Of a DNA stretch of 36,308 bases, positions 1 through 29,840 are shown piece by piece. The position numbers and the translations under genes are program-made. The notes under the pieces were generated by a model. It saw only the letters and a list, made by a program, of their open reading frames with translations, made no database searches and was not told the DNA's origin. Position 1 is the first letter of the stretch. Each line of letters starts with the position of its first letter. The DNA is from Octopus sinensis (taxonomy: Eukaryota). Where the stretch lies: contig NW_021824695.1 in assembly GCF_006345805.1 (NCBI RefSeq), positions 1-36,308 on the forward strand. Reading direction: 5' to 3'.

Positions 1-72
1 ATATATATAATATATAAATATATATATATAAAATAAATATATATAAATATATATATATATATAAATTATTAT

Positions 73-104
<32 letters not shown>

Positions 105-205
105 AATTATATATAAATATATATATATTTTTAAATATATATATATATAATCTATATAAATATATATATAATATTATAATATATATATATAAATACATAC
201 ATATA
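1..205. repeat. (TA)n-rich low-complexity microsatellite
   Basis: Almost pure A/T alternation, read directly from the sequence. Confidence 0.95.
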
Positions 206-665
206 CGTGAATCTTCTCTGGATTGCTTCAAGATCCGCTGTTAATCTTACACTGGTGGGTGACCATAGTTGTGAGCAGTTATCCAGGTGGATGAGGACGA
301 ATGTCCGCCAGAGGACCATCATGGTTTCCTTATCTCTGGTTCTGGATGTTCTAGGATCCATCCAGCCAGTCGTCTACACTTTGTTGCCATCGTTGTAATG
401 TGCACTTGGAAAGAGTCGATACCCAGGTCCCTCAGTGATTTAATCTCTGGGATTGAAATTCCCTGTGGACCAGTGTGCCCTGTAAGTTTCATATTCAGTT
501 TTGGATGCTGGTAGCGCAGGACTTGGAACTTTTCAGCATTAAACTGCATATTTTTTATCCTCAGCCCATCTGTAAATTGAGTCCAACTCCTGCTTCAGGT
601 GTGCAACATCGCTGGGGTTCTGTATTTTCTGCGAGACTTTCGTATCATTTGCATAGCTTGCGTAG
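205..665 (-). mobile_element. Decayed CR1/L2-type LINE reverse transcriptase C-terminal fragment
   Basis: Minus-strand frames give SYANDTK (degenerate YADD), LDSIYRWAEDK-MQFNAEKF, LRDLGI, LAGWIL, LWRTFVLIHLDNCSQLWSP and LEAIQRRFT, the usual CR1 RT-to-C-terminus motif order. The sequence is frameshifted. Confidence 0.8.
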
Positions 666-3729: not shown

Positions 3730-5985
3730 GTCTGGACCGAACCAAACCCCTAGCAATTTAATCGGACCCTCCGTCCAACGTCCCACGACGCTGTCAGGAG
3801 GCATCGGCTTGCCTCTCCAGGTGCCGAGTTGCAATCCGACTGACTTTTCGCGATTAACTTTTGCTCCTGTCACCGTCTCGTAAACCTCTATGGCCTTGCC
3901 TACTTTACGTAGGTGGTCCATTTCGGTTACGATGATGGTGATGTCATCCGCGTACGCTGACACCGATTTTCCACTACCTGGCTGTCTCGGGATGCCGCTC
4001 AGTTTTCGCAGTAATGGCTCAAGAGCCATCACGTACAAAAGCGGGGAGAGCGGACACCCTTGACGAACCGAGCGCTTGATGTTGAACGGCTTCGACAAGA
4101 AGCCGTTCACCCGAACTACCCAGTCGATGTTGTCGTAAATTTGGATAATCCACCTGAGGAAGCCAAGGCTCACCCCGAACTGAGCCAGGGCAGATACCAG
4201 GTAGCGATGGTCGACCCTATCGAATGCTTTAGATTGGTCTAAATGGACCAGTGCCCCACCCTTGCCAGAATCGCTATTAAACCCCTCTATAGTGTACCGC
4301 ATAAGATGGAGATTATCCTGAATGGTTCTGCCAGGAACGGCATATGTCTGTGCCTCCCCGATCAGACCATCCGCGACACGCGCCAATCTTTTCGTTAACA
4401 CTTTGGCCAAAATCTTCAACAGAGTGATGGGCCTGAAATTATCAATGCACTGCCCCTTGCTCGGGTCCTTTCTGACGAGTGTCACTACTCCCCGGCGCAC
4501 AGATCTGGGTATGAGCCCGTTCTGCTGCCAGTTCGCATAGACCTCCGCCAGTAGGTGCCCGAACAAGTCTGGCATACTCTTATATAACTCATAGGGTAGA
4601 CCATCTAAACCCGGCGCCTTGCCCGCGCCGCAGTCCGCCATCGCCTCAACCATCTCCCCAGGCGTGATTGGCCCTTCACAGCCCTCCGCATCTCGCCCCG
4701 ATAAGCGCGGCAGCCCGTCGAGGAGGTCCGTAAAGGCCCTCCTCCTATCCAGTCCGCCGCACTCACCGAAAAGCTGAGCGAAGTGCTCCTGAAAGGCCTC
4801 ACACATCTCCTCGGGCTCGTTTATCAACTCACCTTGTTGGTTCGTCATAGATCGAATCGTGGCATCGTTACCACGCTGAGCTTCCACCACTCGGGCCCAT
4901 CTCACGGCGTTGATTCCTTCACAACCCATTGCGCGGATCCTAGCCCTGACAATGCAGCCCATGTGTTTGGCCTCGAGGTGCTGGTTTAACACCAGTCTCT
5001 TGGACATCACCTGAGCCGCAGAGCCAGTTTTCAAGGCTTCCTCTAATTCCTTAACTAGAGTAGTTTCCCTCCTAGCCTCTCTAGCCACTACTCCTATGCT
5101 ATATCTAATTTACTCGAATTTGATGGCTCGTTTGAGGGCGTACCACCATTTGTTATTAATGATGGTACCAGATAGTGCCCTCTGAATTATAGTCCTAATC
5201 CGGTCTCTGTACTCCTTAATCGCCAAAAGGGACGTATTAAGTTTCCAGTAACCGGATCCTCTATTTTTAACCTTATCTATGTCAAGCTTACAGGTGACCA
5301 TTTTGTGATCACTGTAGCTGACCAGGTAAAACTGTGGACACTTAGCTATTTTTCTGTCTACTTTTCTAATTAGTATCCTATCTAAATATGACCTGGAAGA
5401 TCCGTCGCTGTTTGACCATGTCCACAATGGAGCGTTCGGAAATTCCAACCTATAAGGATCTGCTAGCTCAAAGCGGCTTAGCAGTTCCATGAAGCCACTG
5501 TTACCTTTTCTATCTGGACACGAGCCAACACAATCTACATCCGCTTTGCAAATTGTGTTAAAGTCTCCTAGCATAACTAATGAATGCGAAGTACCAAGAA
5601 AGTTTTCCAGTTCTCGAAAATAATCACTTTGCCCTTTATGGTTGGGTGCGTAAATTGCAACCAGTCTGATAACTTTACCGTTACTGAACGTCAAATCCAT
5701 GACGACCAGCCTACCTTCTGGATCTGCAAAAATTAACTTTTTCTCAGAAACCCGGTTTCTTTTTAATAGGACCAACACCCCACCCCCGCCTGTAGGACTG
5801 CCAGGAGAGAAAAAACTCTCGTAGCCGTCAAACAGCGGGAGTAGACCTCTTGGCCCCTCTAACTGGGTTTCTGTAGCAACAATAACATCTAAATTACGCG
5901 ACCTGATATCATTAAGGAAGCGACCTTGCTTCCAGCTTGATCCCAGGCCGCGCACATTTAAACAACCAACATGAATGTAATCCAT
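3730..5985 (-). pseudogene. Unit D ORF2 (APE endonuclease plus RT), with a nonsense codon and truncation
   Basis: Motifs LNVRG, ATET, IYAPN, GDFN, YLDRI, SDH, DQSKAFDRV, QGCPLSP and YADD. An in-frame TAA lies at 5110-5112, where A and C have TCT. A 12-nt in-frame deletion removes NTEL. Confidence 0.92.
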
Positions 5986-5993
5986 TACTTACC

Positions 5994-7272
5994 TTATATC
6001 AGTGGTTCGGTTTTTTCTTTTTCTTCTTTGTTTGTCTCTTTTTCTGGGCCTCGTGGGGGAGTCTGACGCAGGCCCTCGAATATATATGGAGATGTTATAT
6101 CCATTCTGAGCGGGCCCACGTCATGAAAAAATTCGGACTTTATCCGTCCGTAATCCTTCAGGCCTATTCTGTACAATATATAGTCATTTTTCCACCTTGG
6201 CCATAGCTGCCAACACATTACCGAGTCTATTGTTCGAGGCCTTTATGGCCATAAATGAGTTCAACGACTCTCTTTTCTTCTTTTGGTTTACTTTGGGAGG
6301 GGTGGTTTCAGTTTTTCTTTTTTTCCTGGTGATTTTTGACCACCCCTCCTCATTTTTTGTTTCCTCGCTCTTTGTTTCCTCCGCCGCCGGTTCCGCTGCC
6401 TCTGTCACCTCCACACCTTCAGCCGTCCCTTCTGGGTCGCCCGGCGCTGCTTCTGGTGACACCTCTTCTTTTCTTCCACTTGGCTGAGCTGCTTCCTGCG
6501 GTTTGGGCTGGCATTCTGCCCTTACGTGCCCTTTCTTGCCGCAGCCGAAGCACCTCGGCTTTCTGCCCTCTACGAAGACTGTGACTCTATCTTCTTCACT
6601 TATTTTTAGAGTCTCTGGTATCTCTTCCAGTGTTTGTATTTCTGCCTGGATGGCTATTATTATCCGCTGCCCTTTCCAGAATTCTTCCTCCTCTACTGTG
6701 GCCTGGAGGATGTTTATTTTTTCCTCCAGGCCTACCATAACTGCTGCCACCAGACATGCGGCATCCGCTTCTGGCGGAATATTATTCATTGTGATCTTTG
6801 AGGTTCTTTTGCCTCTATACAGGGGGAGGAGAACAATATTCTCCGCTTTTATTGGTTCCATAGATAGCTTTTGGGCTACCTCCTCTGTTGTGAATCTCAC
6901 CTCCACTGTGCCGTATTTCTTCCCTCTATTGATGTATGTGATCTTATCCATTATCGGTTTTAGGCAGTTTTCAATTTTTTTCTCCTTTATTTTTTGTATA
7001 GATTTACTTGTTATATTGAAGGTCTTATATATTATTCTTCTTTTTGAAATCTCTTCCTGCTTTTGGGCATTTGTAACCACTGTTACTTCCGTGCCCTCTT
7101 TTGTCATACAGTCTGCGTATTTCTTTAGGTCTTCAACGTTAATTGTTTTTATTTTCTTACCAGCTACTTCAGAGAATTTTTTCACTGGTGCTGGGGTTTC
7201 TTTTTTCTTTGGCGACACCGTCGGTGATCCTGCATCACTAGACACAGGTGAATATGAGATGGGGGAGTCCAT
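5994..7272 (-). pseudogene. Unit D ORF1 (gag-like, CCHC zinc knuckle), frameshifted near the C-terminus
   Basis: The ATG at 7272 (MDSPISY) aligns with the starts of A and C. Knuckle CFGCGKKGHVRAEC. The frameshift lies in an A5 run near 6187-6191, and the C-terminus ...EKTEPLI continues in the other frame. Confidence 0.9.
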
Positions 7273-7745
7273 CTCCGACAACTGGCTTAACAAGCTCTTG
7301 GCACAAGCCGCAATAATGATAGTTTTTTCCCCACGGAGGGGGGAACACCAACACGAAGCCCTCGCACGAAGGCTGACTGCAACAGTTGTACAACAACAGA
7401 CAAAGACAATTAGACACACAGTAGAATATAACGGAGAAAATATACGCAACGGAAAAATATAATAACTCACTACACACGCGATTTGCTTTCCTCCATGTTG
7501 TTTTATTATTACCCACAAGGGGCGAACATAGATGGGACAATACAATTTGATGATGGGGTCAGACACACGAATGGATTTTTACAATAAAACGAATTTTAAA
7601 ATTTTCATGAAATTACAATAAATGGACAGAAATCGAATGATGTAACAGACCGGAAGACATTACGGGTGGAGTGGGTGCGGGTTTAGCTCGGACCCCACGA
7701 GCCCCGCCTCCCCACTGATACTTTTGGTTACGCTTGGTCTTACAT

Positions 7746-10700
7746 TTATGTTGTATCATTCACTCGCAACTTTTGTGCTACATCTTTCCATCGTTCTTCA
7801 TACACTCTCCTAGTCAGGCATATTCTCTCCAGCCCTATCTTCCTTTTCAGGTGAAAGATGAAATAATTCATTAAACCAGGGCCGGAGATGAACTTGCCTG
7901 ACTGTAGACCTTTCATTCTCGTCTTCCATATCACCTCTTTCGCAATTGCTACTACAACGAGAAAACGAAACTTACCTTCATTCACGAGGAAATCCGGTGG
8001 GTCAATTTTTGTAATCGACTCAGCCGACAGCTGTACTCTTCGTGTAACTGACAACAGCTGTTCGGTATAAAACCACACCTCAGACACGTCCGGACAATGA
8101 ACAATAGCGTGCGGGACGGTTTCCCTATCCCGCCCGCATCTTGGAGATATCGGACTGTCTTGGCCACCGTGCCTTGCGAGTTTATCCCGAACAGGTAGAG
8201 CTCCTCTGTAGCATTGCCATGCCAGAGACTTCTGGAAGTTGTCCAGTGTCCTCGGCTTGAACGTACGTCGGAACAGACTGACCAGCTGATTATCGTCGAG
8301 ACCTAGGGTTTCCCCCAAGGTATCTTCACATTCCGCCTCTACCAACCCTCTATAGAAGAATGTGGTGGAACCCCCACCGCAGGCGTTGCCCGAGCGACGG
8401 AATAGCAGGAGAGCCTTCCGACACTCCGTGTACCAAGTACCAAGTTTCGATCTACGATTCAGCCAGGTTTCCCGTCCACCGAAACTAGTGAACTTGGGAA
8501 ACATCAGTTTTGCTAGCGAAGACCACACCCGTTCACCATCCAGGTAGAGCCACAGATGTCTTAACCTCAGCGCATGTCTGCGCATCATCAGCCAAGGCAT
8601 CCCTAGCCCACCCTTTAACGGTTGTTGACAGCAAGTAGAGCGTTTCACAAGTGGTTTCCCGCCCTTCCACAAGAAGTAGAAGAGCTGTCTTTCCAACTTG
8701 ATCAACCACGAATCAGGGCAAGGAACGACGGAAACCGATGCGATGAACACATTGGCCACCTCCGCCCTCCCTTTCAGGGATAGCCACCGCCAAGACCAGG
8801 TCTTGGCTACTGCAGTCACCTTGCTCGTTACCTCGCCCCAATTCTTCTCTATTTGGAGGTCTGGACCGAACCAGACCCCTAGCAATTTAATCGGACCCTC
8901 CGTCCAACGTCCCACGACGCTGTCAGGAGGCATCGACTTGCCTCTCCAGGTGCCGAGTTGCAATCCGACTGACTTTTCGCGATTAACTTTTGCTCCTGTC
9001 ACCGTCTCGTAAACCTCTATGGCCTTGCCTACTTTACATAGGTGGTCCATTTCGGTTACGATGATGGTGATGTCATCCGCGTACGCTGACACTGATTTTC
9101 CATTACCTGGCTGTCTCGGGATGCCGCTCAGTTTTCGCAGTAATGGCTCTAGAGCCATCACGTACAAAAGCGGGGAGAGCGGACACCCTTGACGAACCGA
9201 GCGTTTGATTTTGAACGGCTTCGACAAGAAGCCGTTCACCCGAACTACCGAGTCGATGTTATCATAAATTTGGATAATCCACCTGAGGAAGCCAAGGCTC
9301 AGCCCTAACTGTGCCAGGGCAGATACCAGGTAACGATGGTCGACCCTATCAAAAGCTTTAGATTGGTCTAAATGGACCAGTGCCCCACCCTTGCCAGAAT
9401 CACTATTAAACCCCTCTATAGTGTACCGCATTAGATGGAGATTATCCTGAATGGATCTGCCCGGAACGGCACATGTCTATGCCCCTCCGATCAGACCATC
9501 CGCGACATGCGCCAATCTTTTTGATAACACTTTGGCCAAAATCTTCAACTCTGTGTTTAGCAGAGTGATGGGCCTGAAATTATCAATGCACTCTCCCTTG
9601 CTCGGGTCCTTTCTGACGAGTGTCACTACTCCCCGGCGCACAGATCTGGGTATAAGCCCGTTCTGCTGCCAGTTCGCATAGACTTCCGCTAGTAGGTGCC
9701 CGAACAAGTCTGGCATATTCTTATATAACTCATAGGGTAGACCATCCAAACCCGGCGCCTTGCCCGCGCCGCAGTCCGCCATTGCCTCAACCACCTCCTC
9801 AGGCGTGATTGGCCCTTCACAGCCCTCCGCATCTCGCCCCGATAAGCGCGGCAGCCCGTCGAGTAGGTCCGTAAAGGCCCTCCTCCTATCCAGTCCACCG
9901 CACTCACCGAAAAGCTGAGCGAAGTGCTCCTGAAAGGCCTCACACATCTCCTCGGGTTCGTTTATCAACTCACCTTGTTGGTTCGTCAAAGATCGAATCG
10001 TGGCATCGTTACCATGCTGTGCTTCCACCACTCGGGCCCATCTCACGGCGTTGATTCCTTCACATCCCATATGGCGGATTCTAGCCCTGACAATGCAGCC
10101 CATGTGTTTGGCCTCGAGGTGCTGGTTTAACACCAGTCTCTTGGACATCACCTGAGCCGCGGAGCCAGTTTTCATGGCTTCCTCTAATTCCTTAACTAGA
10201 GTAGTTTCCCTTCTAGCCACTACTCCTATGCTATATCTAATAGACTCAAACTTGATGGCTCGTTTGAGGGCGTACCACCATTTGTTATTAATGATGGTAC
10301 CAGATAGTGCCCTCTGAATTATATTCCTAATCCGGTCTTTGTACTCCTTAATCGCCAAAAGGGACGTATTAAGTTTCCAGTAACCGGATCCTCTATTTTT
10401 AACCTTATCTATGTCAAGCTTACAAGTGACCATTTTATGATCACTGTAGCTGATCGGGTAAAACTGTGGACACTTAGCTATTTTACTGTCTACTTTTCTA
10501 ATTAGTATTCTATCTAAATATGACCTGGAAGATCAAATTGTGTTAAAGCCTCCTAGCACAACTAATGAATGCGAAGTACCAAGAAAGTTTTCTAGTTCAC
10601 GAAAATAATCACTTTGCCCTGTATGGTTGGGTGCGTAAATTGCAACCAGTCTGATAACTTTACCATTACTGAACGTCAAATCCATGACGACCAGCCTACC

Positions 10701-10970
10701 TTCTGGATCTGCAAAAATTAACTTTTTCTCAGAAACCCGGTTTCTTTTTAATAGGACCAACACCCCACTCCCGCCTGTAGGACTGCCAGGAGAGAAAAAA
10801 CTCTCGTAGCCGTCAAACAGCGGGAGCAGACCTCTTGGCCCCTCTAACCGGGTTTCTGTAGCAACAATAACATCTAAATTACGCGACCTGATATCATGCA
10901 GGAAGCAACCTTGCTTCCAGCCTGTTCCCAGGCCGCGCACATTCAAACAACCAACATAAATGCAATCCAT
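7746..10970 (-). pseudogene. Unit C ORF2 (endonuclease, RT, C-terminal zinc finger), inactivated
   Basis: One reading frame with two stops: a TGA created at a 147-nt deletion junction (10533-10535) and CAG>TAG at 9477-9479. GDFN has become GGFN and CPRC has become SPRC. There are further 9-nt and 15-nt in-frame deletions relative to A. Confidence 0.93.
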
Positions 10971-10979
10971 TACTTACCT

Positions 10980-12352
10980 TTATATCAGTGGTTCGGTTTT
11001 CTCTCGTTCTTCCAACTCTTTTTCTGGGCCTCGTGAGGGAGTCTGACGTAGGCCCTCGAATATATGTGGAGATGTCACCTCCAATCTAAGTGGGCCTACG
11101 TCGTGGAAGAATTCGGATTTTATCCGCCCGTAATCCTTCCGGCCTATTCTGTAGATCACAAAGTCATTTTTCTTTTCCACTTTCTCCACCTTGGCCATAG
11201 CAGCCAACACGTTTCCTAGTCTGCTATTCGCTGCCTTTACGGCCATATATGAGTCCATTGTCTCTCTCTTCTTTTTTAAAATTATTCTGGGAGGGGTGGT
11301 ATCCGTTTTTCTTTTTTTTTTTCGGTAATTTTTTTCCACCCCTCCTCATTTATCTTTTCCTCGCTCTTGTTCTCCTCCGCCGCTGGTTCTGCTGTCACCG
11401 TCACCTCCACACCTTCGGTCTTCCCTTCTGGGCCGTCCGACGTTGCTTCTGGTGACACTTCTTTTTCTCTTGGCTTCGGTGTTTCCTGCGGTTTGGGTTT
11501 GGGTTGGCATTCCGCCCTTACATGACCCTTCTTGCCGCAGCCGAAGCACCTCGGCCTCCTGCCCTCCACGAAAACAGTTATTTTTTCCTCTTCGCTAATT
11601 TTTACTGTTTCTGGAATTTCTTCCAGTGTTTGTGTCTCCGCCTGTATGGCTATCACTATCTTTTGTCCTTTCCAGAACTCCTCTTCTTCCACTGTGGCCT
11701 GGAGGATGTTTATTTTTTCCTCCAGGCCTACCATCACTGCTGCCACCAGACATTCTGCATCTGCCTCTGGGGGAATGTTGTTCATTGTGATTTTTGATGT
11801 CCGCTTTCCTCTATATAATGGTAATAGAACGATGTTTTCTGCTTTGAAAGTCTCCATTGATAGTTTTTTCGCTATCTCTTCAGAGGTAAAACGCACCTCC
11901 ACTGTGCCGTATCTTTTACCTCTGTTTATATATGTTATTTTGTCCATTATTGGTTTCAAACATAACTCTATTTTTTTCTCCTCGATTTTCTGAATCATTC
12001 TTGTAGCTGTGTTGTACGTTTTGTAAATAATTATTTTCCTCTCTATATCTTCATGTTTCTGTACGTCTGCGACCACAGTCACTTCCGTGCCCTCTTTCTT
12101 TACACTGTCTGCGAATTTTTCTAGATTTTCAACGTTTATTGTTTTAATTTTTTTCCCAGCTACTTCAGCGAATTTTTTCGCTGGAGTTGATGCTGGTATT
12201 GATTTTTCTATTTTCTGGGGCGACGCCGCCTCCTTTTTCTTCGGCGATAACGCCTCTTTTTTTCTTGGCGACAACGCCTCTTTTTTTCCTGATGTCAACG
12301 CCGGGTATTCGTCCTCGCTCGTCACGGGCGAATAGGAGATGGGGGACTCCAT
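10980..12352 (-). pseudogene. Unit C ORF1 (gag-like, CCHC), one frameshift in a poly-A run
   Basis: MESPISY start and CFGCGKKGHVRAEC knuckle. The T11 run at 11312-11322 would need 12 bases to keep frame. Confidence 0.9.
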
Positions 12353-12576
12353 CTTAAACAAATGGCTTTAACAAGCCTTTGGAGATTCCAAAATAATTGT
12401 AGTTTTCCCCCCCGGAGGGGGGAACACCAACGCGAAGTCCTCGCGTGAAGGCTGACTTCTTCAGTTAAACAACAGTAAACAAACAGGTATACAGACAATA
12501 TAGAAAAACAGAGATAATACTATGAGAGCAAAATATATAACTTACTAACAGACGCAAAAATTGATTTCAGACATGT

Positions 12577-14347
12577 GATTTTATTACTACCCACAAGGGG
12601 CGAACATAGATGGGACAATACAATCGGGGAACTTAAAATAAGAAAGCGAATGACAAGAAAAGGAAAAAATAAAAGTAAAAATGACATATGAAAGAATATT
12701 TACAATGAGATGTAAATGTCCACTCGATCCCCGGAATCAAGTGGTTACATTTTCGTCACATATATTTCACAATATTTTCTTTTTTCTCTTCTTTCTTCTC
12801 TCACAATTCTATACGTATTCCATAATAACTTTCAATTCTCTAAAGTCAATCACTGAGCCCTCAGGCAGCCGCTCTCTCACTCGAACACTCGTGTAAAATA
12901 TTACACTCTCTCCGGCAGCTCTGAGGAACTCAGCGACTCTTTCTTCGGGGATTAGAGCAGTCTCCTGCCACTGATCGGTCATCCTGTTGACCCACACATG
13001 TCCCTCCGTATTACATGTTAAGTCTTTCATTTCGGGGCAGAAATGGAAGGTTATTAACTTGTAGAAGCAGTAATCTTGTTTCCGTCCTACGTTTTCCTTC
13101 GTTTTTCTTTTCGGGCTTATTTCTTCCTTGTTCTCCTCTCTTTGTTTCTCCCTTTCTCTCTTTTTGCTTTCTTTTCTTTCTTCTTCCTTCTCTTGTCTTT
13201 TTGGTTCTTTGTCTGTTCTCTCTTTCTCTCGTGTTTTATGTTCCTTTTCTTTTTCTTTTTGTGTGCCGTCTTTTCTTTTCGTTTGATTCTGATCTTTCTC
13301 TTGTTTTTTTCCTGTTGGTTCTTTTTCCTTTTTTTTTCCTGACTCTGTTTTGGTTCTATTTCTTTCTTTTCTTTTATTTCTTTTTCCTTCATTGACTTAT
13401 TATTTCCTTTCTCTTGTTGTTTTGTTTCCTTTTCTATGTTTTCTTTTTCATTTACCGTATTCTTCTTTTCTTCAAGTTCCTGCTCGCACTCCGCTACGAA
13501 TTCGTATAACGGGCACTCTTTTTTAATGTGCCCCCTTGTCCCGCACAGGTAACAGTTTGGTTTTCTTCCCTCTACAATTACACTGAGGGTTTTCTCATCT
13601 TCAATTTCTATTCTGTAGGGGAACCTTTCAATGTCCTCTTTTGTGGCCATCAAACACAGTTCTACCCCATATCCTCTCCAGTTTACCGCGTTGGACTCCT
13701 TAAAGGATTCCACCTCCACTTCCTCTTCTGCTGCTCCTAGAATAGCTGTTGCCAGCCATTCTGTTTTCACTTCTGGGGGTATATTCGGATTTTAACCCGG
13801 ACCCCTCTTCTTCCCTTGTATGAGGGCCACATTATAAATGTTTCCGCTCTTAGTACAGTGGTAGCCAGTGAGGCTGCAATTTCTTCCGTTGCACATCTCA
13901 CCTCCACCGTACCAAATTTCTTGCCTCTACTCACGTAGGTCGATTTCCCCATTATGTCTCCCAGACATTTTTCGATTTCGGCTATCTCCACTCTTGCCAG
14001 TTTCTTTGTATTTTTGTCTTGGGTTCTATATGTTACTGTCTTGTTTTCTTTGTCCTCTTTTGCTTTCGCGGGGGGGATTAGCTTCACGCTATCACCCTCC
14101 CTTTTGAATAGCTTTTCATATTCTTTGAGTTTACTCTTCTCAAAGAAAACATCCTTCACGATTATCGACGAATCGTTATTTTTCCCGGTGACCCCCACGT
14201 AAGTCGCCATGACTAGAGGGTCAATTCACCTTCTTCGGAAGGTTTCCACACGTGGAGGCAAACGCCTCGCGCGATATCAAATCAATTTACACAGAAAAAT
14301 TTCACCGTCTAGTCACAGATAACAACACACATAGATTTCAGACATGT
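12577..14347 (-). mobile_element. Unit B: ORF1-only, non-autonomous Tx1-related element (HAL1-like architecture)
   Basis: Starts at the same ACATGTCTGAAAT motif and ends in the same 46-nt tail as the autonomous units. It encodes only a diverged ORF1, and no EN or RT motif is visible between the stop (12809) and the tail (12624). Confidence 0.8.
12809..14210 (-). CDS. Unit B divergent gag-like ORF1 (~467 aa if two single-base deletions are repaired)
   Basis: TYVSRGKKFGTVEVRCATEEIA aligns with TYINRGKRFGTVEVRFATEDIA of A. Knuckle CYLCGTRGHIKKEC. Adding one A at ~13784 restores RNIPPEVK, and adding one A in the run at 13329-13337 restores an E/K-rich linker that runs into a C-terminal domain ending IMEYV*. 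Confidence 0.78.
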
Positions 14348-14590
14348 TGTTTTATTATTACCCACAAGGGGCGAACACAGAGGGGACAAAACAATCTGAT
14401 TTGGGGTCAGACATACGAATGGTTTTTACACAAAATCGGATTTAAAAATTTTCATGAATTACAATAAATGGACAGAATCGGATGATGGGACAGACCGGAA
14501 GACGTTACGGGTGGAGTGGGTGCGGGTTTAGCTCGGACCCCACGAGCCCCGCCTCCCCACTGATACTTTTGGTTAAGCTTGGTATTACAT

Positions 14591-17500
14591 TTATGTTGTA
14601 TCTTTCACTCGCAACTTTCGTGCTACATCCTTCCATCGTTCCTCATACACTCTCCTAGTCAGGCATATTCTCTCCAGCCCTATCTTCCTTTTCAGGTGAA
14701 AGATGAAATACTTCATCAAACCAGGGCCGGAGATGAACTTGCCTGACTGTACACCTTTCATTCTCGTCTTCCATATCACCTCTTTCGCAATTGCTACTAC
14801 AACGAGAAAACGAAACTTACCTTCATTCACGAGGAAATCCGGTGGGTCAATTTTTGTAATCGACTCAGTCGACAGCTGTACTCTTCGTGTACCTGACAAC
14901 AGGTGTTCGGCATAAACCCACACCTCAGACACGTCCGGACAATGAACAATAGCGTGCGGGACGGTTTCCCTATCCCGCCCGCATCTTGGACATATCGGAC
15001 TGTCTTGGCCACCGTGCCTTGCGAGTTTATCCCGAACAGGTAGAGCTCCTCTGTAGCATTGCCATGCCAGAGACTTCTGGAAGTTGTCCAGTGTCCTCGG
15101 CTCGAACGTACGTCGGAACAGACTGGCCAGCTGATTATCGTCGAGACCTAGGGTTTCCCCCAAGGTATCTTCACATTCCGCCTCTACCAACCCTCTATAG
15201 AAGAATGTTGTGGAACCCCCACCGCAGGCGTTGCCCGAGCGACGGAATAGCAGGAGAGCCTTGCGACACTCCGTGTACCAAGTACCAAGTTTCGATCTAC
15301 GATTCAGCCAGGTTTCCCATCCACCGAAACTGGTGAACTTGGGAAACATCAGTTTTGCCAGCGAAGACCACACCCGTTCACCATCCAGGTAGAGCCACAG
15401 ATGTCTTAACCTCAGCGCATGTCTGCGCATCATCAGCCAAGGCATCCCTAGCCCACCCTTTAACGGTTGTTGACAGCAAGTAGAGCGTTTCACAAGTGGT
15501 TTCCCGCCCTTCCACAAGAAGTAGAAGAGTTGTCTTTCCAACTTGATCAACCACGAATCAGGGCAAGGAACGACGGAAAGGCGGTAGGTGATAACCGATG
15601 CGATAAACACATTGGCCACCTCCGCCCTCCCTTTCAAGGATAGCCACCGCCAAGACCAGGTCTTGGCTACTGCAGCCACCTTGCTCGTTACCTCGCCCCA
15701 ATTCTTCTCTATTTGGAGGTCTGGACCGAACCAGACCCCTAGCAGTTTAATCGGACCCTCCGTCCAACGTCCCACGACGCTGTCAGGAGGCATCGACTTG
15801 CCTCTCCAGGTGCCGAGTTGCAAGCCGACTGACTTTTCGCGATTAACTTTTGCTCCTGTCACCGTCTCGTAAACCTCTATGGCCTTGCCTACTTTACATA
15901 GGTGGTCCATTTCGGTTACGATGATGGTGATGTCATCCGCGTACGCTGACACTGATTTTCCATTACCTGGCTGTCTCGGGATGCCGCTCAGTTTTCGCAG
16001 TAATGGCTCAAGAGCCATCACGTACAAAAGCGGGGAGAGCGGACACCCTTGACGAACCGAGCGTTTGATTTTGAACGGCTTCGACAAGAAGCCGTTCACC
16101 CGAACTACCGAGTCGATGTTATCATAAATTTGGATAATCCACCTGAGGAAGCCAAGGCTCAGCCCGAACTGTGCCAGAGCAGACACCAGGTAACGATGGT
16201 CGACCCTATCAAAAGCTTTAGATTGGTCTAAATGGACCAGTGCCCCACCCTTGCCAGAATCACTATTAAACCCCTCTATAGTGTACCGCATTAGATGGAG
16301 ATTATCCTGAATGGATCTGCCCGGAACGGCACATGTCTGTGCCTCCCCGATCAGACCATCCGCGACACGCGCCAATCTTTTCGATAACACTTTGGCCAAA
16401 ATCTTCAACTCTGTGTTTAGCAGAGTGATGGGCCTGAAATTATCAATGCACTCCCCCTTGCTCGGGTCCTTTCTGACGAGAGTCACTACTCCCCGGCGCA
16501 CAGATCTGGGTATAAGCCCGTTCTGCTGCCAGTTCGCATAGACCTCCGCCAGTAGGTGCCCGAACAAGTCTGGCATACTCTTATATAACTCATAGGGTAG
16601 ACCATCCAAACCCGGCGCCTTGCCCGCGCCGCAGTCCGCCATTGCCTCAACCACTTCCTCAGGTGTGATTGGCCCTTCACAGCCCTCCGCATCTCGCCCC
16701 GATAAGCGCGGCAGACCGTCGAGTAGGTCCGTAAAGGCCCTCCTCCTATCCAGTCCGCCGCACTCACCGAAAAGCTGAGCGAAGTGCTCCTGAAAGGCCT
16801 CACACATCTCCTCGGGCTCGTTTATCAACTCACCTTGTTGGTTCGTCAAAGATCGAATCGTGGCATCGTTACCATGCCGAGCTTCCACCACTCGGGCCCA
16901 TCTCACGGCGTTGATTCCTTCACATCCCATATGACGGATTCTAGCCCTGACAATGCAGCCCATGTGTTTGGCCTCGAGGTGCTGGTTTAACACCAGTCTC
17001 TTGGACGCCACCTGAGCCGCAGAGCCAGTTTTCATGGCTTCCTCTAATTCCTTAACTAGAGTAGTTTCCCTTCTAGCCTCTCTAGCCACTACTCCTATGC
17101 TATATCTAATAGACTCAAACTTGATGGCTCGTTTGAGGGCGTACCACCATTTGTTATTAATGATGGTACCAGATAGTGCCCTCTGAATTATATCCTAATC
17201 CGGTCTTTGTACTCCTTAATCGCCAAAAGGGACGTATTAAGTTTCCAGTAACCGGATCCTCTATTTTTAACCTTATCTATGTCAAGCTTACAAGTGACCA
17301 TTTTATGATCACTGTAGCTGATCGGGTAAAACTGTGGACACTTAGCTATTTTACTGTCTACTTTTCTAATTAGTATTCTATCTAGATATGACCTGGAAGA
17401 TCCGTCGCTGTTTGACCATGTCCACAATGGAGCGTTCGGAAATTCCAGCCTATAAGGATCTGCTAGCTCAAAGCGGCTTAGCAGTTCCATGAAGCCACTG

Positions 17501-17985
17501 TTGCCTTTTCTATCTGGACACGAGCCAACATAATCTACATCCGCTTTGCAAATTGTGTTGAAGTCTCCTAGCACCACTAATGAATGCGAAGTACCAAGAA
17601 AGTTTTCTAGTTCACGAAAATAATCACTTTGCCCTGTATGGTTGGGTGCGTAAATTGCAACCAGTCTGATAACTTTACCGTTACTGAACGTCAAATCCAT
17701 GACGACCAGCCTACCTTCTGGATCTGCAAAAATTAACTTTTTCTCAGAAACCCGGTTTCTTTTTAATAGGACCAACACCCCACTCCCGCCTGTAGGACTG
17801 CCAGGAGAGAAAAAACTCTCGTAGCCGTCAAACAGCGGGAGTAGACCTCTTGGCCCCTCTAACCGGGTTTCTGTAGCAACAATAACATCTAAATTACGCG
17901 ACCTGATATCATGCAGGAAGCGACCTTGCTTCCAGTCTGCTCCCAGGCCGCGCACATTTAAACAACCAACATAAATGGAATCCAT
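14591..17985 (-). CDS. Unit A ORF2: APE endonuclease, reverse transcriptase and CCHC zinc finger (1131 aa if the 1-nt deletion is repaired)
   Basis: EN motifs LNVRG, ETR, GDFN, YLDRI, SDH. RT motifs PGLDG, NFRPI, DQSKAFD, QGCPLSP, YADD. C-terminal CPRCx8Hx4C. A reads aggatata where C reads aggaatata, giving a single frameshift. Confidence 0.92.
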
Positions 17986-17994
17986 TACTTACCT
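17986..17994 (-). promoter_or_regulatory. Consensus 5' splice-donor-like motif AG/GTAAGTA in the ORF1-ORF2 spacer (also at 10971-10979 and 5986-5994)
   Basis: The motif is identical in three copies and complementary to the U1 snRNA 5' end. Function is not shown. Confidence 0.4.
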
Positions 17995-19367
17995 TATATC
18001 AGTGGTTCGGTTTTCTCTTGTTTTTCTAAATCTTTATCTGGGCCTCGTGGGGGAGTCTGACGTAGGCCCTCGAATATATGTGGGGATGTCACATCCAATC
18101 TAAGTGGGCCTACGTCATGGAAGAATTCTGACTTTATCCGCCCGTAATCCTTCCGGTCTATTCTATAAATTACAAAGTCATTTTTTTTCTCTACTTTCAC
18201 CACTTTGGCCATGGCTGCCAACACGTTTCCGAGTCTGCTATTTGATGCTCTTACTGCCATATATGAGTTTGACTCTTTTTTCTTTTTTAAAATTACTCTG
18301 GGAGGGGTGGTTTCCGTTTTTCTTTTTTTTTTTTTTCCGATAATTTTTGCCCACCCCTCCTCATTTATCTTTTCCTCGCTCTTTTCTTTCTCCGCCGCTG
18401 GTTCTGCTGTCACCTCCACACCTTCAGTCTTCCCTTCTGGGCCGTCTGACGCTGCTTCTGGTGACACATTGTCTTCTTTTTCTTTTGGCTTAGGTGCTTC
18501 CTGCGGTTTGGGTTGGGGTTGGCATTCCGCCCTTACGTGCCCCTTCTTGCCGCAGCCGAAGCACCTCGGTTTCCTGCCCTCTACGAACACTGTTATTTTC
18601 TCGTCTTCACTAATCCTCAACGTTTCTGGAATTTCTTCCAATGTTTGCACCTCTGCTTGGATGGCTATCACAATTTTTTGGCCCTTCCAAAACTCTTCTT
18701 CCTCCACTGTGGCCTGGAGGATGTTTATTTTTTCCTCCAGACCTACCATCACTGCTGCCACCAGACATTCAGCATCTGCCTCTGGCGGTATGTTATTCAT
18801 TGAAATTTTCGACGTCCTTTTTCCTTTGTACAATGGTAGTAAGACAATGTTTTCCGCCTTGATTGGTTCCATTGATAATTTCTTCGCTATATCCTCCGTA
18901 GCGAAACGCACCTCCACTGTGCCGAATCTTTTCCCTCTGTTAATATACGTTATCTTGTTCATAAAAGGTTTTAGACAAGACTCTATCTTTTTTTCTTCGA
19001 TTTTTTGGATCATTTTAGTCGCTGTGTCATAGGTTTTATATATTATTCTTTTGTTTTCTATCTCCTCATGTATTTGTAAGTTTGTGGCCACAGTCACTTC
19101 TGTGCCTTCTTTTTTTACACAGTCTGCAAATTTTTTAAAATTGTCTATATTTATTTTTTTGATCTTTTTCCCAGCCACTTCAGCGAATTTTTTTGCTGGA
19201 GTTGATGCTGGTACTTGTTTTTCCATTTTCTTGGGCGACGCCGCCTCTTTTTTCTTCGGCGACAGCGCCTCTTTTTTTCTTGGCGACAACGCCTCTTTTT
19301 TACTTGGCGACAACGCCGGGTATTCATCCTCGCTCGTCACGGGCGAATAAGTGATGGGGGACTCCAT
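17994..19367 (-). CDS. Unit A ORF1, intact 457-aa gag-like protein with SPxK repeats and CCHC knuckle
   Basis: Open from the ATG at 19367 (MESPITY) to the TAA at 17994, with CFGCGKKGHVRAEC. Homologous to ORF1 of C and D. Confidence 0.93.
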   Translation of the reverse strand: MESPITYSPVTSEDEYPALSPSKKEALSPRKKEALSPKKKEAASPKKMEKQVPASTPAKKFAEVAGKKIKKINIDNFKKFADCVKKEGTEVTVATNLQIHEEIENKRIIYKTYDTATKMIQKIEEKKIESCLKPFMNKITYINRGKRFGTVEVRFATEDIAKKLSMEPIKAENIVLLPLYKGKRTSKISMNNIPPEADAECLVAAVMVGLEEKINILQATVEEEEFWKGQKIVIAIQAEVQTLEEIPETLRISEDEKITVFVEGRKPRCFGCGKKGHVRAECQPQPKPQEAPKPKEKEDNVSPEAASDGPEGKTEGVEVTAEPAAEKEKSEEKINEEGWAKIIGKKKKRKTETTPPRVILKKKKESNSYMAVRASNSRLGNVLAAMAKVVKVEKKNDFVIYRIDRKDYGRIKSEFFHDVGPLRLDVTSPHIFEGLRQTPPRGPDKDLEKQEKTEPLI

Positions 19368-19984
19368 CTTGAACAAATGGCTTTAACAAGCCTTTGGTAA
19401 ATCAAAATTAATTGTAGTTTTCCCCCACTGAGGGGGGAACACCAACGCGAAGTCCTCGCGCGAAGGCTGACTTCGTTAGTTATACAACAATGGACAAAAA
19501 ACAGGTAGATCAACAGTATATAATAACAAAGACAACAGTACAAGAGCAAAATATATATCAACTTACTAATAACTCAAAGAATAAATTTCAGACATGTGCT
19601 CAAATCTTCTTTTTTTCTACATTGTATACTTTTCTTTAATTTAATTTTTTATTATCCATCTGGACTATTCCATTTCTGCACGCTAATTTTATTTTTTAAT
19701 TTATTCCCATTCATGTGAAACCACTTATTCAAGTTCAAATCATTGATGCAATTTTATACCAATTGCTATTTTTAATTTTGTTATGTTACGATTATATTAT
19801 ACTTTAGTTTGATTTTAATTATTACTTACTACATATAATTCAATTGTTATTATTATTTTTATTGTTAAAGTGAAAGTATCTGACATAGAATAGAGAAACG
19901 TTTTTGTTTCACTTTTAACACGTAATACTGAAATAGTGGAGAAGATATGATATTGCTATGGGCTCGCTCTAGGCAAGAAGTTGA

Positions 19985-20137
19985 ACATTTTCTTTTGCCC
20001 ATGAAACTACATGGACCCTAAGTAAGGCATGTGTAAAATTTGAATGGAATTGGTTGTGTAGTTCTCAAGTTTTAGGGAAACACACAGACAGACAGACACA
20101 CACACACACACATTCTCAGTTTTATATATATAAAGAT
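19985..20137 (+). mobile_element. Probable 3' part of a non-autonomous Helitron/Helentron-like (HINE/DINE-1-like) element
   Basis: aaatttgaatggaattggttgtgtagtt...acagacagacacac...ttttatatatataaagat matches the layout typical of such elements (pattern recall only). Confidence 0.45.
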
Positions 20138-27912: not shown

Positions 27913-28114
27913 GCGCGCTTGTACGTACGTATCTATTGTACATACTAGATATTCAATGTCTACAGACAAGGGTTTTCACAGAAATAATATTAGATTTTAC
28001 ATTATATACAAGTACACTGAATTAAGCTGTTGTATATAAATATATATCATTTTACTACCCGGCCAACTAAGACGGCAGTAAATGCCGTAACATCTTAAGT
28101 TATTTATACGAACA

Positions 28115-28119
28115 GACAG

Positions 28120-28150
<31 letters not shown>

Positions 28151-28188
28151 ATATATATATATATATACATACATATATATATATATAT

Positions 28189-28229
<41 letters not shown>

Positions 28230-28355
28230 TATATATATATATATACACATATATATATATATATATATACACATACATATATATATATATATATATACAC
28301 ATACATATATATATATACATACATACATATATATACATACATACATATATATATA

Positions 28356-28392
<37 letters not shown>

Positions 28393-28395
28393 ATA
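28115..28395. repeat. Compound (CA)/(TA)/(CATA) microsatellite
   Basis: Read directly from the sequence. It explains the spurious Y/I/M/C/V ORFs here. Confidence 0.95.
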
Positions 28396-28596
28396 TACAT
28401 ACATAGATAACGACAGAGGCAATATTATTACCTACACTTAAAGTGGATGTTGTGCTAGAAGATAGAATATTTACCACGAGGGGACTGATATGGAATTATG
28501 ATGCACAAAAATACTGGTGTTTATATCGCTGTTGGGTGAGGACCATCCGCTACGACCGCTGCGACTGCCAGATCACCTGATTTCGGCATTCATATA

Positions 28597-29433: not shown

Positions 29434-29629
29434 TTTTTCTACAGGAAAACAAAATTTACATTTGATCAGTTCTTTTGAAGATTAAAGTAAAGTTCCATTT
29501 CAGAAAATAATACAAATTTTTATATGCCTGAAACATTATCAACAAGGTTGATAGCGTCAAGTTTTAAGTTGCAGAGAGCCTTAATATTTATTTGGAGACA
29601 TTTATCAATATGCTACGCCTTGAAACTGG

Positions 29630-29840
29630 ATTTCACTTATTTCATTTTTGAAATACACATATACATACATTCACATATATACATACTTACAAATATATAC
29701 ACACATATACACATACAAATATATAAACTTATATTCATACAAATATACACACATACATACAAATATACACACACATATATATACGCATATATATATATAT
29801 ATACGCACACATATGCACACATACAATATATACACACATT
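29630..29840. repeat. Degenerate (CATA/TA/CA)-rich low-complexity tract
   Basis: Read directly from the sequence. Confidence 0.85.

What the first reader, a model, noticed from the sequence alone, without database searches (positions are those of the whole stretch)
12577..14347. ORF1-only non-autonomous element embedded in the Tx1 array (candidate new HAL1-like parasite/partner)
Seen: a 1771-bp unit between two full-length Tx1 copies. It has its own 5'UTR, a single diverged gag-like ORF (22/34 identical to A in the best-conserved block, plus a CCHC knuckle), a ~185-nt AT-rich 3'UTR with no EN/RT traces, the family's 5' junction motif and the family's 3' tail. Known: TPRT truncates from the 5' end, so it cannot by itself yield a 5'-complete element that lacks ORF2; ORF1-only HAL1 elements derived from L1 are described in vertebrates. 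Inferred: B is a distinct family mobilised in trans by the Tx1 ORF2 into the same target site. It may supply its own RNP coat, or modulate or compete with the autonomous ORF1. I do not know of a described cephalopod Tx1-derived example, but cannot check.
Basis: partly seen in the sequence, partly recalled or inferred. Interest (0 to 1): 0.88.

Follow-up and report, generated by a model that had tools for sequence, protein, structure and literature searches.

The report
Gag-only partner of octopus LINE
A 1.8-kb octopus retrotransposon keeps only the RNA-coating (ORF1/gag-like) gene and most likely borrows the copying enzyme of its 5-kb neighbour, whose 3' end and insertion site it shares; mammalian HAL1 and fly HeT-A live the same way, so this is a new lineage of a known kind.

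Summary
Window 12577-14347 (minus strand) is a discrete 1771-bp unit between two full-length APE+RT LINEs (A3, A2). It has a 137-nt 5'UTR, an ORF1 homologue (23/34 identical to A in the best block, plus a CCHC knuckle), no EN/RT, a 183-nt AT-rich 3'UTR and A's ~49-nt tail. This copy is dead: it carries two 1-nt deletions.

In Octopus vulgaris I found 24 more full-length copies (1762-1789 bp), in seven arrays at six chromosomal locations. One has an intact 467-aa ORF. None is followed by an ORF2. Older ORF1-only subfamilies (B', B'') and a third ORF1-only family (C) also exist. dN/dS between subfamilies is 0.09-0.16.

Arrays are stratified. The youngest B subfamily lies at the 5' end of three arrays and differs by ~1% between chromosomes. 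That indicates sequential site-specific insertion, not local duplication.

Nine of ten sampled O. vulgaris arrays, and the window's, sit at one site in an ~850-bp Helitron-like repeat, as Tx1L sits in Tx1D. The "family 5' junction motif" tracks the array more than the element, so it is probably partly target-derived.

B works like HAL1 or HeT-A but belongs to neither. Trans-mobilisation by A is inferred, not shown.

The parts
12577..14347 (-). B: complete ORF1-only non-autonomous unit (1771 bp)
   Evidence: Boundaries come from the tail/junction repeats. 24 further units of 1762-1789 bp in O. vulgaris loci L001, L002, L006, L007, L008, L009 and L010 align end to end at 92.6-96.4%.
14334..14347 (-). 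5' junction block ACATGTCTGAAATC (TSD-like; shared with A3 and A2 in this array)
   Evidence: The block is shared by different element types within one array: L006 B and A both start ACATGGCTCCAAGCTAT, and all 8 B units in L001 start ACGTGTCGGAAATC. It differs between arrays.
14211..14347 (-). B 5'UTR (137 nt), with a TCGCGCGAGG motif at 14265-14274 that is also in A3's 5'UTR
13788..14210 (-). B ORF1, segment 1 (ATG at 14210; includes the best-conserved block at 13875-13976)
   Evidence: The frame is lost at about 13788 through a 1-nt deletion relative to the intact copy L001:9523-10926.
13333..13787 (-). B ORF1, segment 2 (second frame); CCHC zinc knuckle CYLCGTRGHIKKEC at 13513-13554, then the start of the K/E-rich low-complexity linker
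   Evidence: The second 1-nt deletion is at about 13333.
12809..13332 (-). B ORF1, segment 3 (third frame): rest of the linker plus the B-specific C-terminal domain ending ...IMEYV, with the stop at 12811-12809
   Evidence: This segment is contiguous with the rest of the ORF in the intact copies P0001 and L001 unit 5. It has no similarity to A. AF2 gives a confident beta-alpha-beta-beta-alpha-beta fold.
12626..12808 (-). B-specific 3'UTR (183 nt, 30% G+C), unrelated to A's 3'UTR
   Evidence: no ORF2 trace
12577..12625 (-). Shared 3' tail GATTGTATTGTCCCATCTATGTTCGCCCCTTGTGGGTAGTAATAAAATC
   Evidence: Matches the A tails at 7501-7546 and 14350-14396. The core is conserved in A, A', B, B', B'' and C.
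14348..19597 (-). A3: full-length autonomous partner (ORF1 open, 462 codons; ORF2 = APE+RT+zf-RVT with one frameshift)
7501..12576 (-). A2: full-length A copy, decayed (ORF1 frameshift, two in-frame stops in ORF2)
3730..7500 (-). A1: older A copy that starts ACATGGAGGAAAGC and is 3'-truncated at A3 nt 3879
19598..20136 (-). 5' part of the Helitron-like carrier repeat that holds the array (it starts TCTTTATATATATAAAACTGAG at 20136)
   Evidence: Homologous to the flank upstream of the arrays in L001, L003, L005, L006, L007, L008, L009 and L010.

Best explanation
B is a non-autonomous, ORF1-only derivative of a site-specific L1/Tx1-group LINE.

Proposed mechanism:
1. An intact B copy is transcribed from its own short 5'UTR.
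2. Its RNA is translated into a ~467-aa ORF1 protein. This protein has RRM-like domain(s), a CCHC knuckle, a K/E-rich linker and a lineage-specific C-terminal domain. It presumably coats the B RNA in cis.
3. The ~49-nt 3' tail, which B shares with the autonomous element A, recruits A's ORF2 protein (APE endonuclease + reverse transcriptase) in trans.
4. Target-primed reverse transcription then places B at the same site as A: the 5' edge of the array, next to the upstream half of an ~850-bp Helitron-like carrier repeat.
5. Repeated insertion at that one site stacks units head to tail, youngest upstream, each junction carrying a 10-18-nt duplicated block.

Shown here: the anatomy, copy number, fixed length, absence of ORF2, shared tail, shared site, stratified arrays and purifying selection on ORF1.
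Inferred: trans use of A's ORF2 protein, tail recognition, cis coating by B's ORF1 protein, and recognition of the upstream carrier flank.

The copy in the window is an inactive relic.
For: - Anatomy and homology to A's ORF1.
- Copy number: 25 full-length copies of 1762-1789 bp (the window plus seven O. vulgaris arrays at six chromosomal locations), none followed by EN/RT.
- An intact 467-aa ORF exists in L001 unit 5, and a 380-aa annotated protein, P0001, reads through to ...IMEYV.
- Diverged ORF1-only subfamilies B' (~70% nt identity) and B'' (~75%) have the same architecture.
- NG86 dN/dS for B against B'/B'' is 0.09-0.16, the same as between A subfamilies at 0.12.
- The tail core is conserved across A, A', B, B', B'' and C, while the rest of the 3'UTRs is unrelated.
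- Stratigraphy: cluster-1 B units occupy the 5' end of arrays L001, L002 and L008 and differ by 0.8-1.4% between loci, but by 4-5% from the 3' units of their own array. The cluster order is 1,1,1,2,3,3,3,3 in L001 and 1,1,4,2 in L008.
- The same insertion site in the carrier recurs in the window's array and nine O. vulgaris arrays.
- A's ORF2 has APE, RVT_1 and zf-RVT domains, and its best solved relative is human L1 ORF2p at 3e-49.
- Precedent for Tx1-clade behaviour: target-specific insertion into a DNA transposon, and tandem insertions of a non-autonomous partner sandwiching a TSD (PMC4494074).
Against: - No experiment or transcript shows that B RNA uses A's ORF2 protein. Sharing a tail and a site is correlative.
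- The tail hairpin is only 4 bp and invariant, so covariation gives it no support.
- Only 1 of 15 B copies checked for ORF integrity is fully open; the family may be close to extinct.
- dS between subfamilies (0.8-1.3) is near saturation, so omega is approximate.
- L001 units 5-7 differ by only 0.2-0.8%, so some local duplication cannot be excluded.
- The 5' junction block correlates partly with the array and partly with the B subfamily (ACATCGAGGAAATTTACCCACG occurs in both L002 and L008). The TSD reading is therefore not clean.
- All loci were reached through annotated B-type proteins. This biases sampling, and a genome-wide search for B-ORF1+ORF2 elements was not possible.
Confidence: 0.78

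Rival explanations
1. B is a dead deletion derivative that spread only as a local tandem (satellite-like) repeat, by unequal crossing-over or gene conversion inside the arrays, and not by retrotransposition.
For: Units are head to tail with constant length. L001 units 5-7 differ by 0.2-0.8%, and all 8 L001 units carry the same junction block. Most copies have broken ORFs.
Against: Units at the 5' end of arrays at three separate loci differ by ~1% from each other but by 4-5% from units further 3' in their own array, and the age order is the same in each array. Single B units lie between or next to A units (window; L006). dN/dS of 0.09-0.16 between subfamilies requires selection on coding function.
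Confidence: 0.07
2. B's ORF1 normally belongs to its own autonomous element (ORF1+ORF2) elsewhere in the genome. The 1.8-kb form would then be a recurrent internal-deletion or chimeric product with no separate evolutionary life.
For: Only annotated proteins could be searched. A 46%-identical ORF1 in O. bimaculoides (P0011) could not be placed in its genomic context. The C-terminal domain of B differs from the canonical one, which hints at a different ancestor.
Against: Every one of about 35 B, B', B'' and C units examined in 11 loci lacks ORF2 and has the same end-to-end structure. The three B subfamilies, 25-30% diverged in DNA, are all ORF1-only, so this state is old. All 10 B-type protein clusters are 380 aa or shorter and have no RT domain.
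Confidence: 0.08
3. The B unit in this window is an assembly artefact: a collapsed or mis-joined repeat.
For: Repeat arrays are hard to assemble. Read support could not be checked. The two frameshifts lie in homopolymer-like runs.
Against: The same architecture, with exact tail-to-junction boundaries, recurs in eight O. vulgaris arrays that hold B units at ≥92% identity, all read from one chromosome-level assembly. Bwin is a distinct sequence, 2.8-5.6% from every other copy.
Confidence: 0.02

Closest known systems
HAL1 (half-L1) of mammals
   Same: A 5'-complete non-autonomous LINE derivative that encodes only ORF1p and depends on the ORF2p of an autonomous relative. Such derivatives arose more than once (PMC5753468). 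Here, likewise, several ORF1-only lineages (B/B'/B'' and C) accompany one autonomous family.
   Different: B's partner is a site-specific Tx1-like element, not L1. B's ORF1p carries a CCHC knuckle and a novel C-terminal domain. B ends in a specific 49-nt tail rather than poly(A). It inserts at one target and builds arrays. B's ORF1 is only ~35% identical to its partner's ORF1.
HeT-A / TART / TAHRE of Drosophila telomeres
   Same: A gag-only element and an RT-encoding element share mixed head-to-tail arrays built by repeated insertion at one kind of site, and the gag-only element is the more numerous (PMC5537684).
   Different: Those are Jockey-clade elements at chromosome ends with a host function. 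The octopus arrays are internal (for example 64 Mb into a 226-Mb chromosome), lie inside a repeat, and show no sign of a host function.
SINEU-3 and its Tx1-clade partner in crocodilians
   Same: A non-autonomous partner of a Tx1-clade LINE shares its tail, targets one site in a DNA transposon (Mariner-N4_AMi), and forms tandem insertions sandwiching a TSD (PMC4494074).
   Different: SINEU has an snRNA-derived head and no ORF. B is protein-coding (ORF1) and has no match to any Rfam RNA family.
Tx1L in Tx1D (Xenopus composite elements)
   Same: A Tx1-clade LINE that inserts at one specific sequence inside a non-autonomous DNA transposon family (as summarised in PMC4494074).
   Different: The carrier here looks like a Helitron (5'-TC, 3'-CTAG, terminal hairpin, A|T insertion) rather than a piggyBac derivative. 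The site also accumulates long stratified arrays that include ORF1-only elements.

Membership tests
ORF1-only non-autonomous LINE derivative (HAL1-like, functional sense) | Encodes an ORF1 homologue and no endonuclease or reverse transcriptase | tested here: met
   BLASTP against A's ORF1 gives E 2e-28 and 3e-23. Pfam finds only zf-CCHC. tblastn with A's ORF2 gives no hit in any B unit.
ORF1-only non-autonomous LINE derivative (HAL1-like, functional sense) | A discrete, 5'-complete unit of constant length present in many copies | tested here: met
   25 full-length copies of 1762-1789 bp: the window plus seven O. vulgaris arrays at six chromosomal locations.
ORF1-only non-autonomous LINE derivative (HAL1-like, functional sense) | Shares the 3' end recognised by an autonomous partner | tested here: met
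   The 49-nt tail is 91-98% identical to the A tails while the rest of the 3'UTR is unrelated.
ORF1-only non-autonomous LINE derivative (HAL1-like, functional sense) | ORF1 maintained by selection in the ORF1-only lineage | tested here: met
   NG86 omega is 0.13 (B vs B', 243 codons), 0.09-0.16 (B vs B'') and 0.10-0.14 (B' vs B''). dS is near saturation.
ORF1-only non-autonomous LINE derivative (HAL1-like, functional sense) | Mobilised in trans by the partner's ORF2 protein | not testable with these tools
   This needs a retrotransposition assay. Only correlative evidence is available (shared tail, shared site, recent inter-chromosomal copies).
HAL1 proper (Repbase family, L1 clade) | Derived from mammalian L1: L1-type ORF1p and an L1 3' end with poly(A) | tested here: not met
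   B's ORF1 has a CCHC knuckle. B ends in a specific tail with no poly(A). The host is an octopus.
Tx1 clade / L1 group (the autonomous partner A) | ORF2 with an APE endonuclease, a reverse transcriptase and a C-terminal zinc-binding motif | tested here: met
   Pfam: Exo_endo_phos 7.9e-15, RVT_1 1.6e-31, zf-RVT 3.1e-8.
Tx1 clade / L1 group (the autonomous partner A) | RT closer to the L1 group than to other LINE groups | tested here: met
   PDB phmmer: human L1 ORF2p 3e-49 against R2 1e-26. This supports the L1 group only.
Tx1 clade / L1 group (the autonomous partner A) | RT phylogeny places it within the Tx1 clade rather than L1 proper | not tested
   No Tx1 reference sequences (Repbase/Dfam) were available. 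L1-Tx1 families are reported as recently active in O. vulgaris (PMC13282606), but that paper was not linked to this element.
Tx1 clade / L1 group (the autonomous partner A) | Target-specific insertion into a repeated sequence | tested here: met
   The window's array and nine O. vulgaris arrays lie at the same position of the carrier repeat.
HeT-A/TART-type telomeric arrays | Mixed head-to-tail arrays of gag-only and RT-encoding non-LTR elements | tested here: met
   Array maps.
HeT-A/TART-type telomeric arrays | Located at chromosome ends | tested here: not met
   The arrays lie at internal coordinates, for example 64.2 and 115.8 Mb of 225.7 Mb, 100.1 Mb of 128.6 Mb, and 52.2 and 85.7 Mb of 182.4 Mb.
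SINE | Head derived from a small RNA gene (tRNA/7SL/5S/snRNA), non-coding | tested here: not met
   No Rfam family reaches its gathering score anywhere in the window, and B is protein-coding.
Helitron (the carrier repeat) | 5'-TC and 3'-CTRR termini, a 3' hairpin, insertion between A and T without a TSD, no TIRs | tested here: met
   The carrier starts TCTTTATATA... and ends ...GGGTCTTTAATGCTAG, flanked by A| and |T (mostly in (TA)n) in L002, L003 and L005. The hairpin folds at dG -14.6 kcal/mol, z -6.2; it reaches the terminal CTAG, which is atypical.
Helitron (the carrier repeat) | Related autonomous element that encodes Rep/helicase | not tested
   No search was made, so 'Helitron-like' rests on the termini only.

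The most novel reading that the evidence does not exclude
B is not merely a parasite of A but a partner, as HeT-A Gag is for TART. On this reading its ORF1 protein, which has replaced the canonical C-terminal domain of this ORF1 family with a new RRM-like domain, contributes something A needs or benefits from (RNP targeting to the carrier site, or RNA protection). One autonomous and at least three ORF1-only lineages would then co-evolve as a community at a single 'safe-harbour' site in a Helitron-like repeat.
Probability: 0.12. Interest if true: 0.8.

Novelty: new member of a known kind. Interest (0 to 1): 0.52.

Why it matters
ORF1-only LINE derivatives are known from very few systems: HAL1 in mammals and HeT-A in flies. 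They bear on why ORF1p is needed, how strong cis-preference is, and how parasites of parasites evolve.

This octopus system offers several things together:
- a second, independent, site-specific case in a mollusc;
- several co-resident ORF1-only lineages under purifying selection;
- a shared, defined 3' tail that could be tested as the RT recognition signal;
- arrays whose order records insertion history.

It also shows that part of what octopus annotation calls 'uncharacterized proteins' (for example CAI9715248.1) are ORF1 proteins of this element.

Tried and rejected
- B's C-terminal 103 aa against A's proteins gave no similarity, and Pfam found nothing there. I first suspected it was non-coding. 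I dropped that once intact copies read through it and AF2 folded it with confidence.
- RNAalifold on 11 tails gave only an invariant 4-bp hairpin with no covariation, so I make no structural claim.
- Rfam on the whole window found nothing, so the target is not a small-RNA gene.
- The Foldseek search of the PDB gave only weak RRM-like matches (best E 5e-3, none ≤1e-3). The output does not say which domain matched.
- To find the window's own locus, I looked up B's 177-aa ORF; it is not on record. P0002's locus is a different array. The exact source species or assembly of the window is therefore not established. O. vulgaris or a close relative is inferred from 93-96% identity.
- To find the context of the nearest non-B ORF1 (P0011, O. 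bimaculoides), I tried a contig look-up; there is no record.
- A pure TSD model for the 5' junction block is not clean. The block differs between A and the first B in L001 and L007, and the same variants recur in different arrays.
- Bao & Jurka 2010 on HAL1 (PMC2923044) is not held. HAL1's features are taken from PMC5753468.
- Plus-strand ORFs such as 13015-13395 are by-products of the purine/pyrimidine-rich linker and were not considered genes.
Full report
1. WHAT IS IN THE WINDOW

The repeat array lies on the minus strand. A self-BLAST and direct reading of the junctions give this order, 5'->3' on the minus strand:
- flank
- A3, 19597->14348 (5250 bp)
- B, 14347->12577 (1771 bp)
- A2, 12576->7501 (5076 bp)
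- A1, 7500->3730 (truncated at the position matching A3 nt 3879)

A-type units carry an ORF1 of about 460 codons and an ORF2 with Exo_endo_phos (7.9e-15), RVT_1 (1.6e-31) and zf-RVT (3.1e-8) domains. The best solved relative of that ORF2 is human L1 ORF2p (3e-49), ahead of R2 (1e-26). A is therefore an APE-type LINE of the L1/Tx1 group. I could not run a clade-level phylogeny, so 'Tx1' stays a plausible label and not a tested one. Two papers are consistent with it: L1-Tx1 families are reported as recently active in O. vulgaris (PMC13282606), and target-specific insertion is typical of the Tx1 clade (PMC4494074).

A3 is the best-preserved copy: its ORF1 is open and its ORF2 has one frameshift. 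A2 has a frameshifted ORF1 and two in-frame stops in ORF2.

2. THE B UNIT

B has these parts:
- It begins ACATGTCTGAAATC, as A3 and A2 do.
- It has a 137-nt 5'UTR.
- Its ORF1 homologue starts at the ATG at 14210 and ends at the stop at 12811-12809.
- A 183-nt 3'UTR of 30% G+C follows.
- It ends in a 49-nt tail that matches the A tails at 45/46 and 43/47, while the rest of the 3'UTR is unrelated.

The ORF1 homology to A is clear but distant: 40% over 117 aa (E 2e-28) and 26% over 189 aa (E 3e-23). The best 34-aa block is 23/34, and there is a Pfam zf-CCHC hit. A's ORF2 finds nothing in B.

In this copy the ORF is spread over three frames. Alignment with an intact copy places two 1-nt deletions at about 13788 and 13333. 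The last ~100 codons have no counterpart in A.

3. B IS A FAMILY

A protein search with B's N-terminal part returned nine Octopus vulgaris protein clusters at 78-100% identity on six or more chromosomes. One of them, P0001 (380 aa, CAI9715248.1), reads without interruption from the conserved block through the K/E-rich linker into the C-terminal segment ending ...IMEYV. The third-frame segment in the window is therefore real coding sequence.

Fetching the genomic loci from assembly GCA_951406725.2 showed the following arrays:
- L001: eight tandem full-length B units, then an A.
- L002: six or more B units, then a full-length A.
- L006: B, then A.
- L007: C, B, a B/B' chimera, then A.
- L008: four B units, then A.
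- L009: B', B, B', then A'.
- L010: three B units, then A.

In total there are 25 full-length B units of 1762-1789 bp, including the window's. All have the same tail (...GGGTARTAATAAAATC; A tails end ...AAAACA). L001 unit 5 has a fully open 467-codon ORF, but most copies are broken.

Older ORF1-only subfamilies also exist. B' is ~70% identical in DNA, is 1.93 kb long, and occurs in L003, L005, L007 and L009. B'' is ~75% identical and occurs in L004. Both have the same layout and the same C-terminal domain.

A third ORF1-only family, C, is 1.68 kb with an open ORF of about 454 codons. It occurs in L007 8591-10267 and L004 6637-8262. Its ORF1 is ~30% identical to both A and B, and its tail is related.

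None of these units is followed by EN/RT. A profile search found only ten clusters, all 380 aa or shorter and without RT.

4. SELECTION

Nei-Gojobori estimates on the alignable N-terminal 243 codons:
- B vs B': omega 0.13 (dS 1.3)
- B vs B'': omega 0.09-0.16
- B' vs B'': omega 0.10-0.14
- Two A subfamilies, for comparison: omega 0.12

dS is near saturation, so the figures are approximate, but pS (0.5-0.6) far exceeds pN (0.10-0.16). All three B subfamilies are ORF1-only. The simplest reading is that ORF1 stayed under purifying selection within an ORF1-only lineage. That is expected if the protein is needed in cis for propagation.

5. TRANSPOSITION RATHER THAN LOCAL DUPLICATION

I measured pairwise divergence of 21 B units, leaving out the junction block. 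The 5'-most units of arrays L001, L002 and L008 (two chromosomes, three loci) form one cluster. They are 0.8-1.4% apart from each other but 4-5% from the 3' units of their own array.

Cluster order along the arrays is consistent: 1,1,1,2,3,3,3,3 in L001 and 1,1,4,2 in L008. The unit next to A in L001 is 1.1% from the unit next to A in L006.

This stratified pattern fits successive subfamilies inserting at the upstream edge of each array. Some local duplication remains possible, because L001 units 5-7 are only 0.2-0.8% apart.

In the window, the same logic makes A3 the youngest unit, then B, then A2, then A1. That order matches their states of decay.

6. THE TARGET

About 540 bp upstream of the window's array (19598-20136) is homologous to the sequence upstream of every array except L004's. 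A 182-bp sequence follows the arrays in L002, L003, L005, L006, L007 and L008.

Together these two pieces form an ~850-bp repeat with the following features:
- It starts TCTTTATATA... and ends ...GACCCGGCGACGACGGGTCTTTAATGCTAG.
- It has a strong terminal hairpin (dG -14.6 kcal/mol, z -6.2).
- It has no terminal inverted repeats.
- It sits between an A and a T, usually in (TA)n.

These are Helitron-like termini. I did not look for a Rep/helicase partner. The situation parallels Tx1L in Tx1D, and SINEU-3 in Mariner-N4_AMi, where tandem insertions sandwiching a TSD are described (PMC4494074).

In five O. vulgaris carriers (L002, L006, L007, L008 and probably L010; the window's array has the same junction type, but its 3' end is missing), a ~305-nt relic of an older ORF1-bearing element lies between the last A and the carrier's 3' part.

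L004's array (C and B'') sits instead at the 5' edge of a common SINE-like repeat.

7. THE JUNCTION BLOCK

The first 10-18 nt of each unit are hypervariable between arrays but often identical within one array, even across element types:
- ACATGGCTCCAAGCTAT on both B and A in L006.
- ACATGTCTGAAAT on A3, B and A2 in the window.
- ACGTGTCGGAAATC on all eight B units in L001, although those units belong to three subfamilies.
- ATTCCAGTCT(G/T) on B' and A' in L003 and L005, which equals the first bases of the carrier's 3' part.

That is what a target-site duplication produced by repeated insertion at one site would look like. The picture is not clean, though. Some variants recur in different arrays, and the first B often differs from the A downstream of it. 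Part of the block may therefore be carried on the RNA or created during 5' joining.

8. THE PROTEIN

A full HMMER scan of 1.84 billion representative proteins with P0001 found 375 relatives at E ≤ 1e-3, almost all of them matching the N-terminal part. Those I looked up come from octopods: O. bimaculoides, O. sinensis and Argonauta hians.

The B-type C-terminal domain was seen only in O. vulgaris proteins (P0007, P0014, P0067). A's C-terminal region shares an F..DVG motif with distant relatives (P0015, P0030, P0057), so A has the canonical form and B a replacement.

AlphaFold2 on a 30-sequence alignment gave a mean pLDDT of 70.8. It folds residues 295-380 with confidence as beta-alpha-beta-beta-alpha-beta, and the linker is disordered or helical. 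Foldseek's best PDB matches are RRM-like domains, but they are weak (5e-3 to 0.1).

9. VERDICT

B is a real, multi-copy, ORF1-only non-autonomous element. It shares the tail and the insertion site of an autonomous L1/Tx1-group LINE.
- It works like HAL1 (PMC5753468) and, in its array habit, like HeT-A with TART (PMC5537684).
- It is a member of neither: it is not L1-derived, it has no poly(A), and it is not telomeric.
- I found no description of it in the searchable literature. Repbase and Dfam could not be checked.
- Trans-mobilisation by A's ORF2 protein, recognition of the tail, and cis coating by B's own ORF1 protein are inferences.
- The copy in the window is an inactive relic.

Noticed in passing
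window 19598-20136 (minus strand); L003 4665-5332 and 14223-14404: The arrays sit inside an ~850-bp Helitron-like non-autonomous repeat: 5'-TC, 3'-CTAG, a strong terminal hairpin, insertion at A|T in (TA)n. The window holds only its 5' part.
   Followed up: yes
L007 8591-10267; L004 6637-8262: A third ORF1-only family (C, ~1.68 kb) with an open ORF of about 454 codons that includes a CCHC knuckle. Its ORF1 is ~30% identical to both A and B, and its tail is related (...GCCCCTGGTGGGTAATAAAGAAATA). It sits at the 5' end of arrays.
   Followed up: partly
L003 5333-9204; L005 7287-9165; L009 7442-9296 and 11152-12941; L004 8264-10287: Older ORF1-only subfamilies B' (~70% nt identity to B) and B'' (~75%). 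They have the same architecture and often pair with a diverged A' whose 5'UTR differs.
   Followed up: partly
L007 12043-13682: A chimeric unit: B nt 1-137 (96%) is joined to B' nt 427-1928 (95%). This could reflect template switching or recombination between the two subfamilies.
   Followed up: no
L002 16112-16419; L006 16300-16607; L007 18897-19191; L008 19763-20061: A ~305-nt relic lies between the last A tail and the carrier's 3' part. It starts ACATGGAGGAAAGC and contains a decayed fragment resembling the conserved ORF1 block. It looks like the oldest insertion, already present when this carrier subtype spread.
   Followed up: partly
L004 6600-10330: One array (C + B'') is not in the carrier. 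It abuts the 5' edge of a very common SINE-like repeat (AGAAACGTTAGCACGCCGGGCGAAATGCTTAGCGG...), with an 18-nt junction block. This hints at a second target specificity.
   Followed up: no
window 3730-7500: A1 starts with a different junction block (ACATGGAGGAAAGC). It stops abruptly at the position matching A3 nt 3879, and neither the rest of the element nor the carrier's 3' part appears in the window. This suggests a deletion or rearrangement.
   Followed up: partly
window 14265-14274 and 19454-19463 (minus strand): The motif TCGCGCGAGG occurs in the 5'UTRs of both B and A3 (0.02 expected by chance) and also in B' and A' 5'UTRs. It may be a shared internal promoter or RNA element.
   Followed up: partly
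window 32903-33159: A fragment of an unrelated LINE ORF2, ~54% aa identity to A's ORF2 over 56 aa.
   Followed up: no
window 1-210, 28100-28480, 29600-29850: Long AT/ACAT-type microsatellite tracts. The low-complexity purine-rich ORF1 linkers also generate spurious plus-strand ORFs (for example 13015-13395, 6503-7462, 18205-19032).
   Followed up: no
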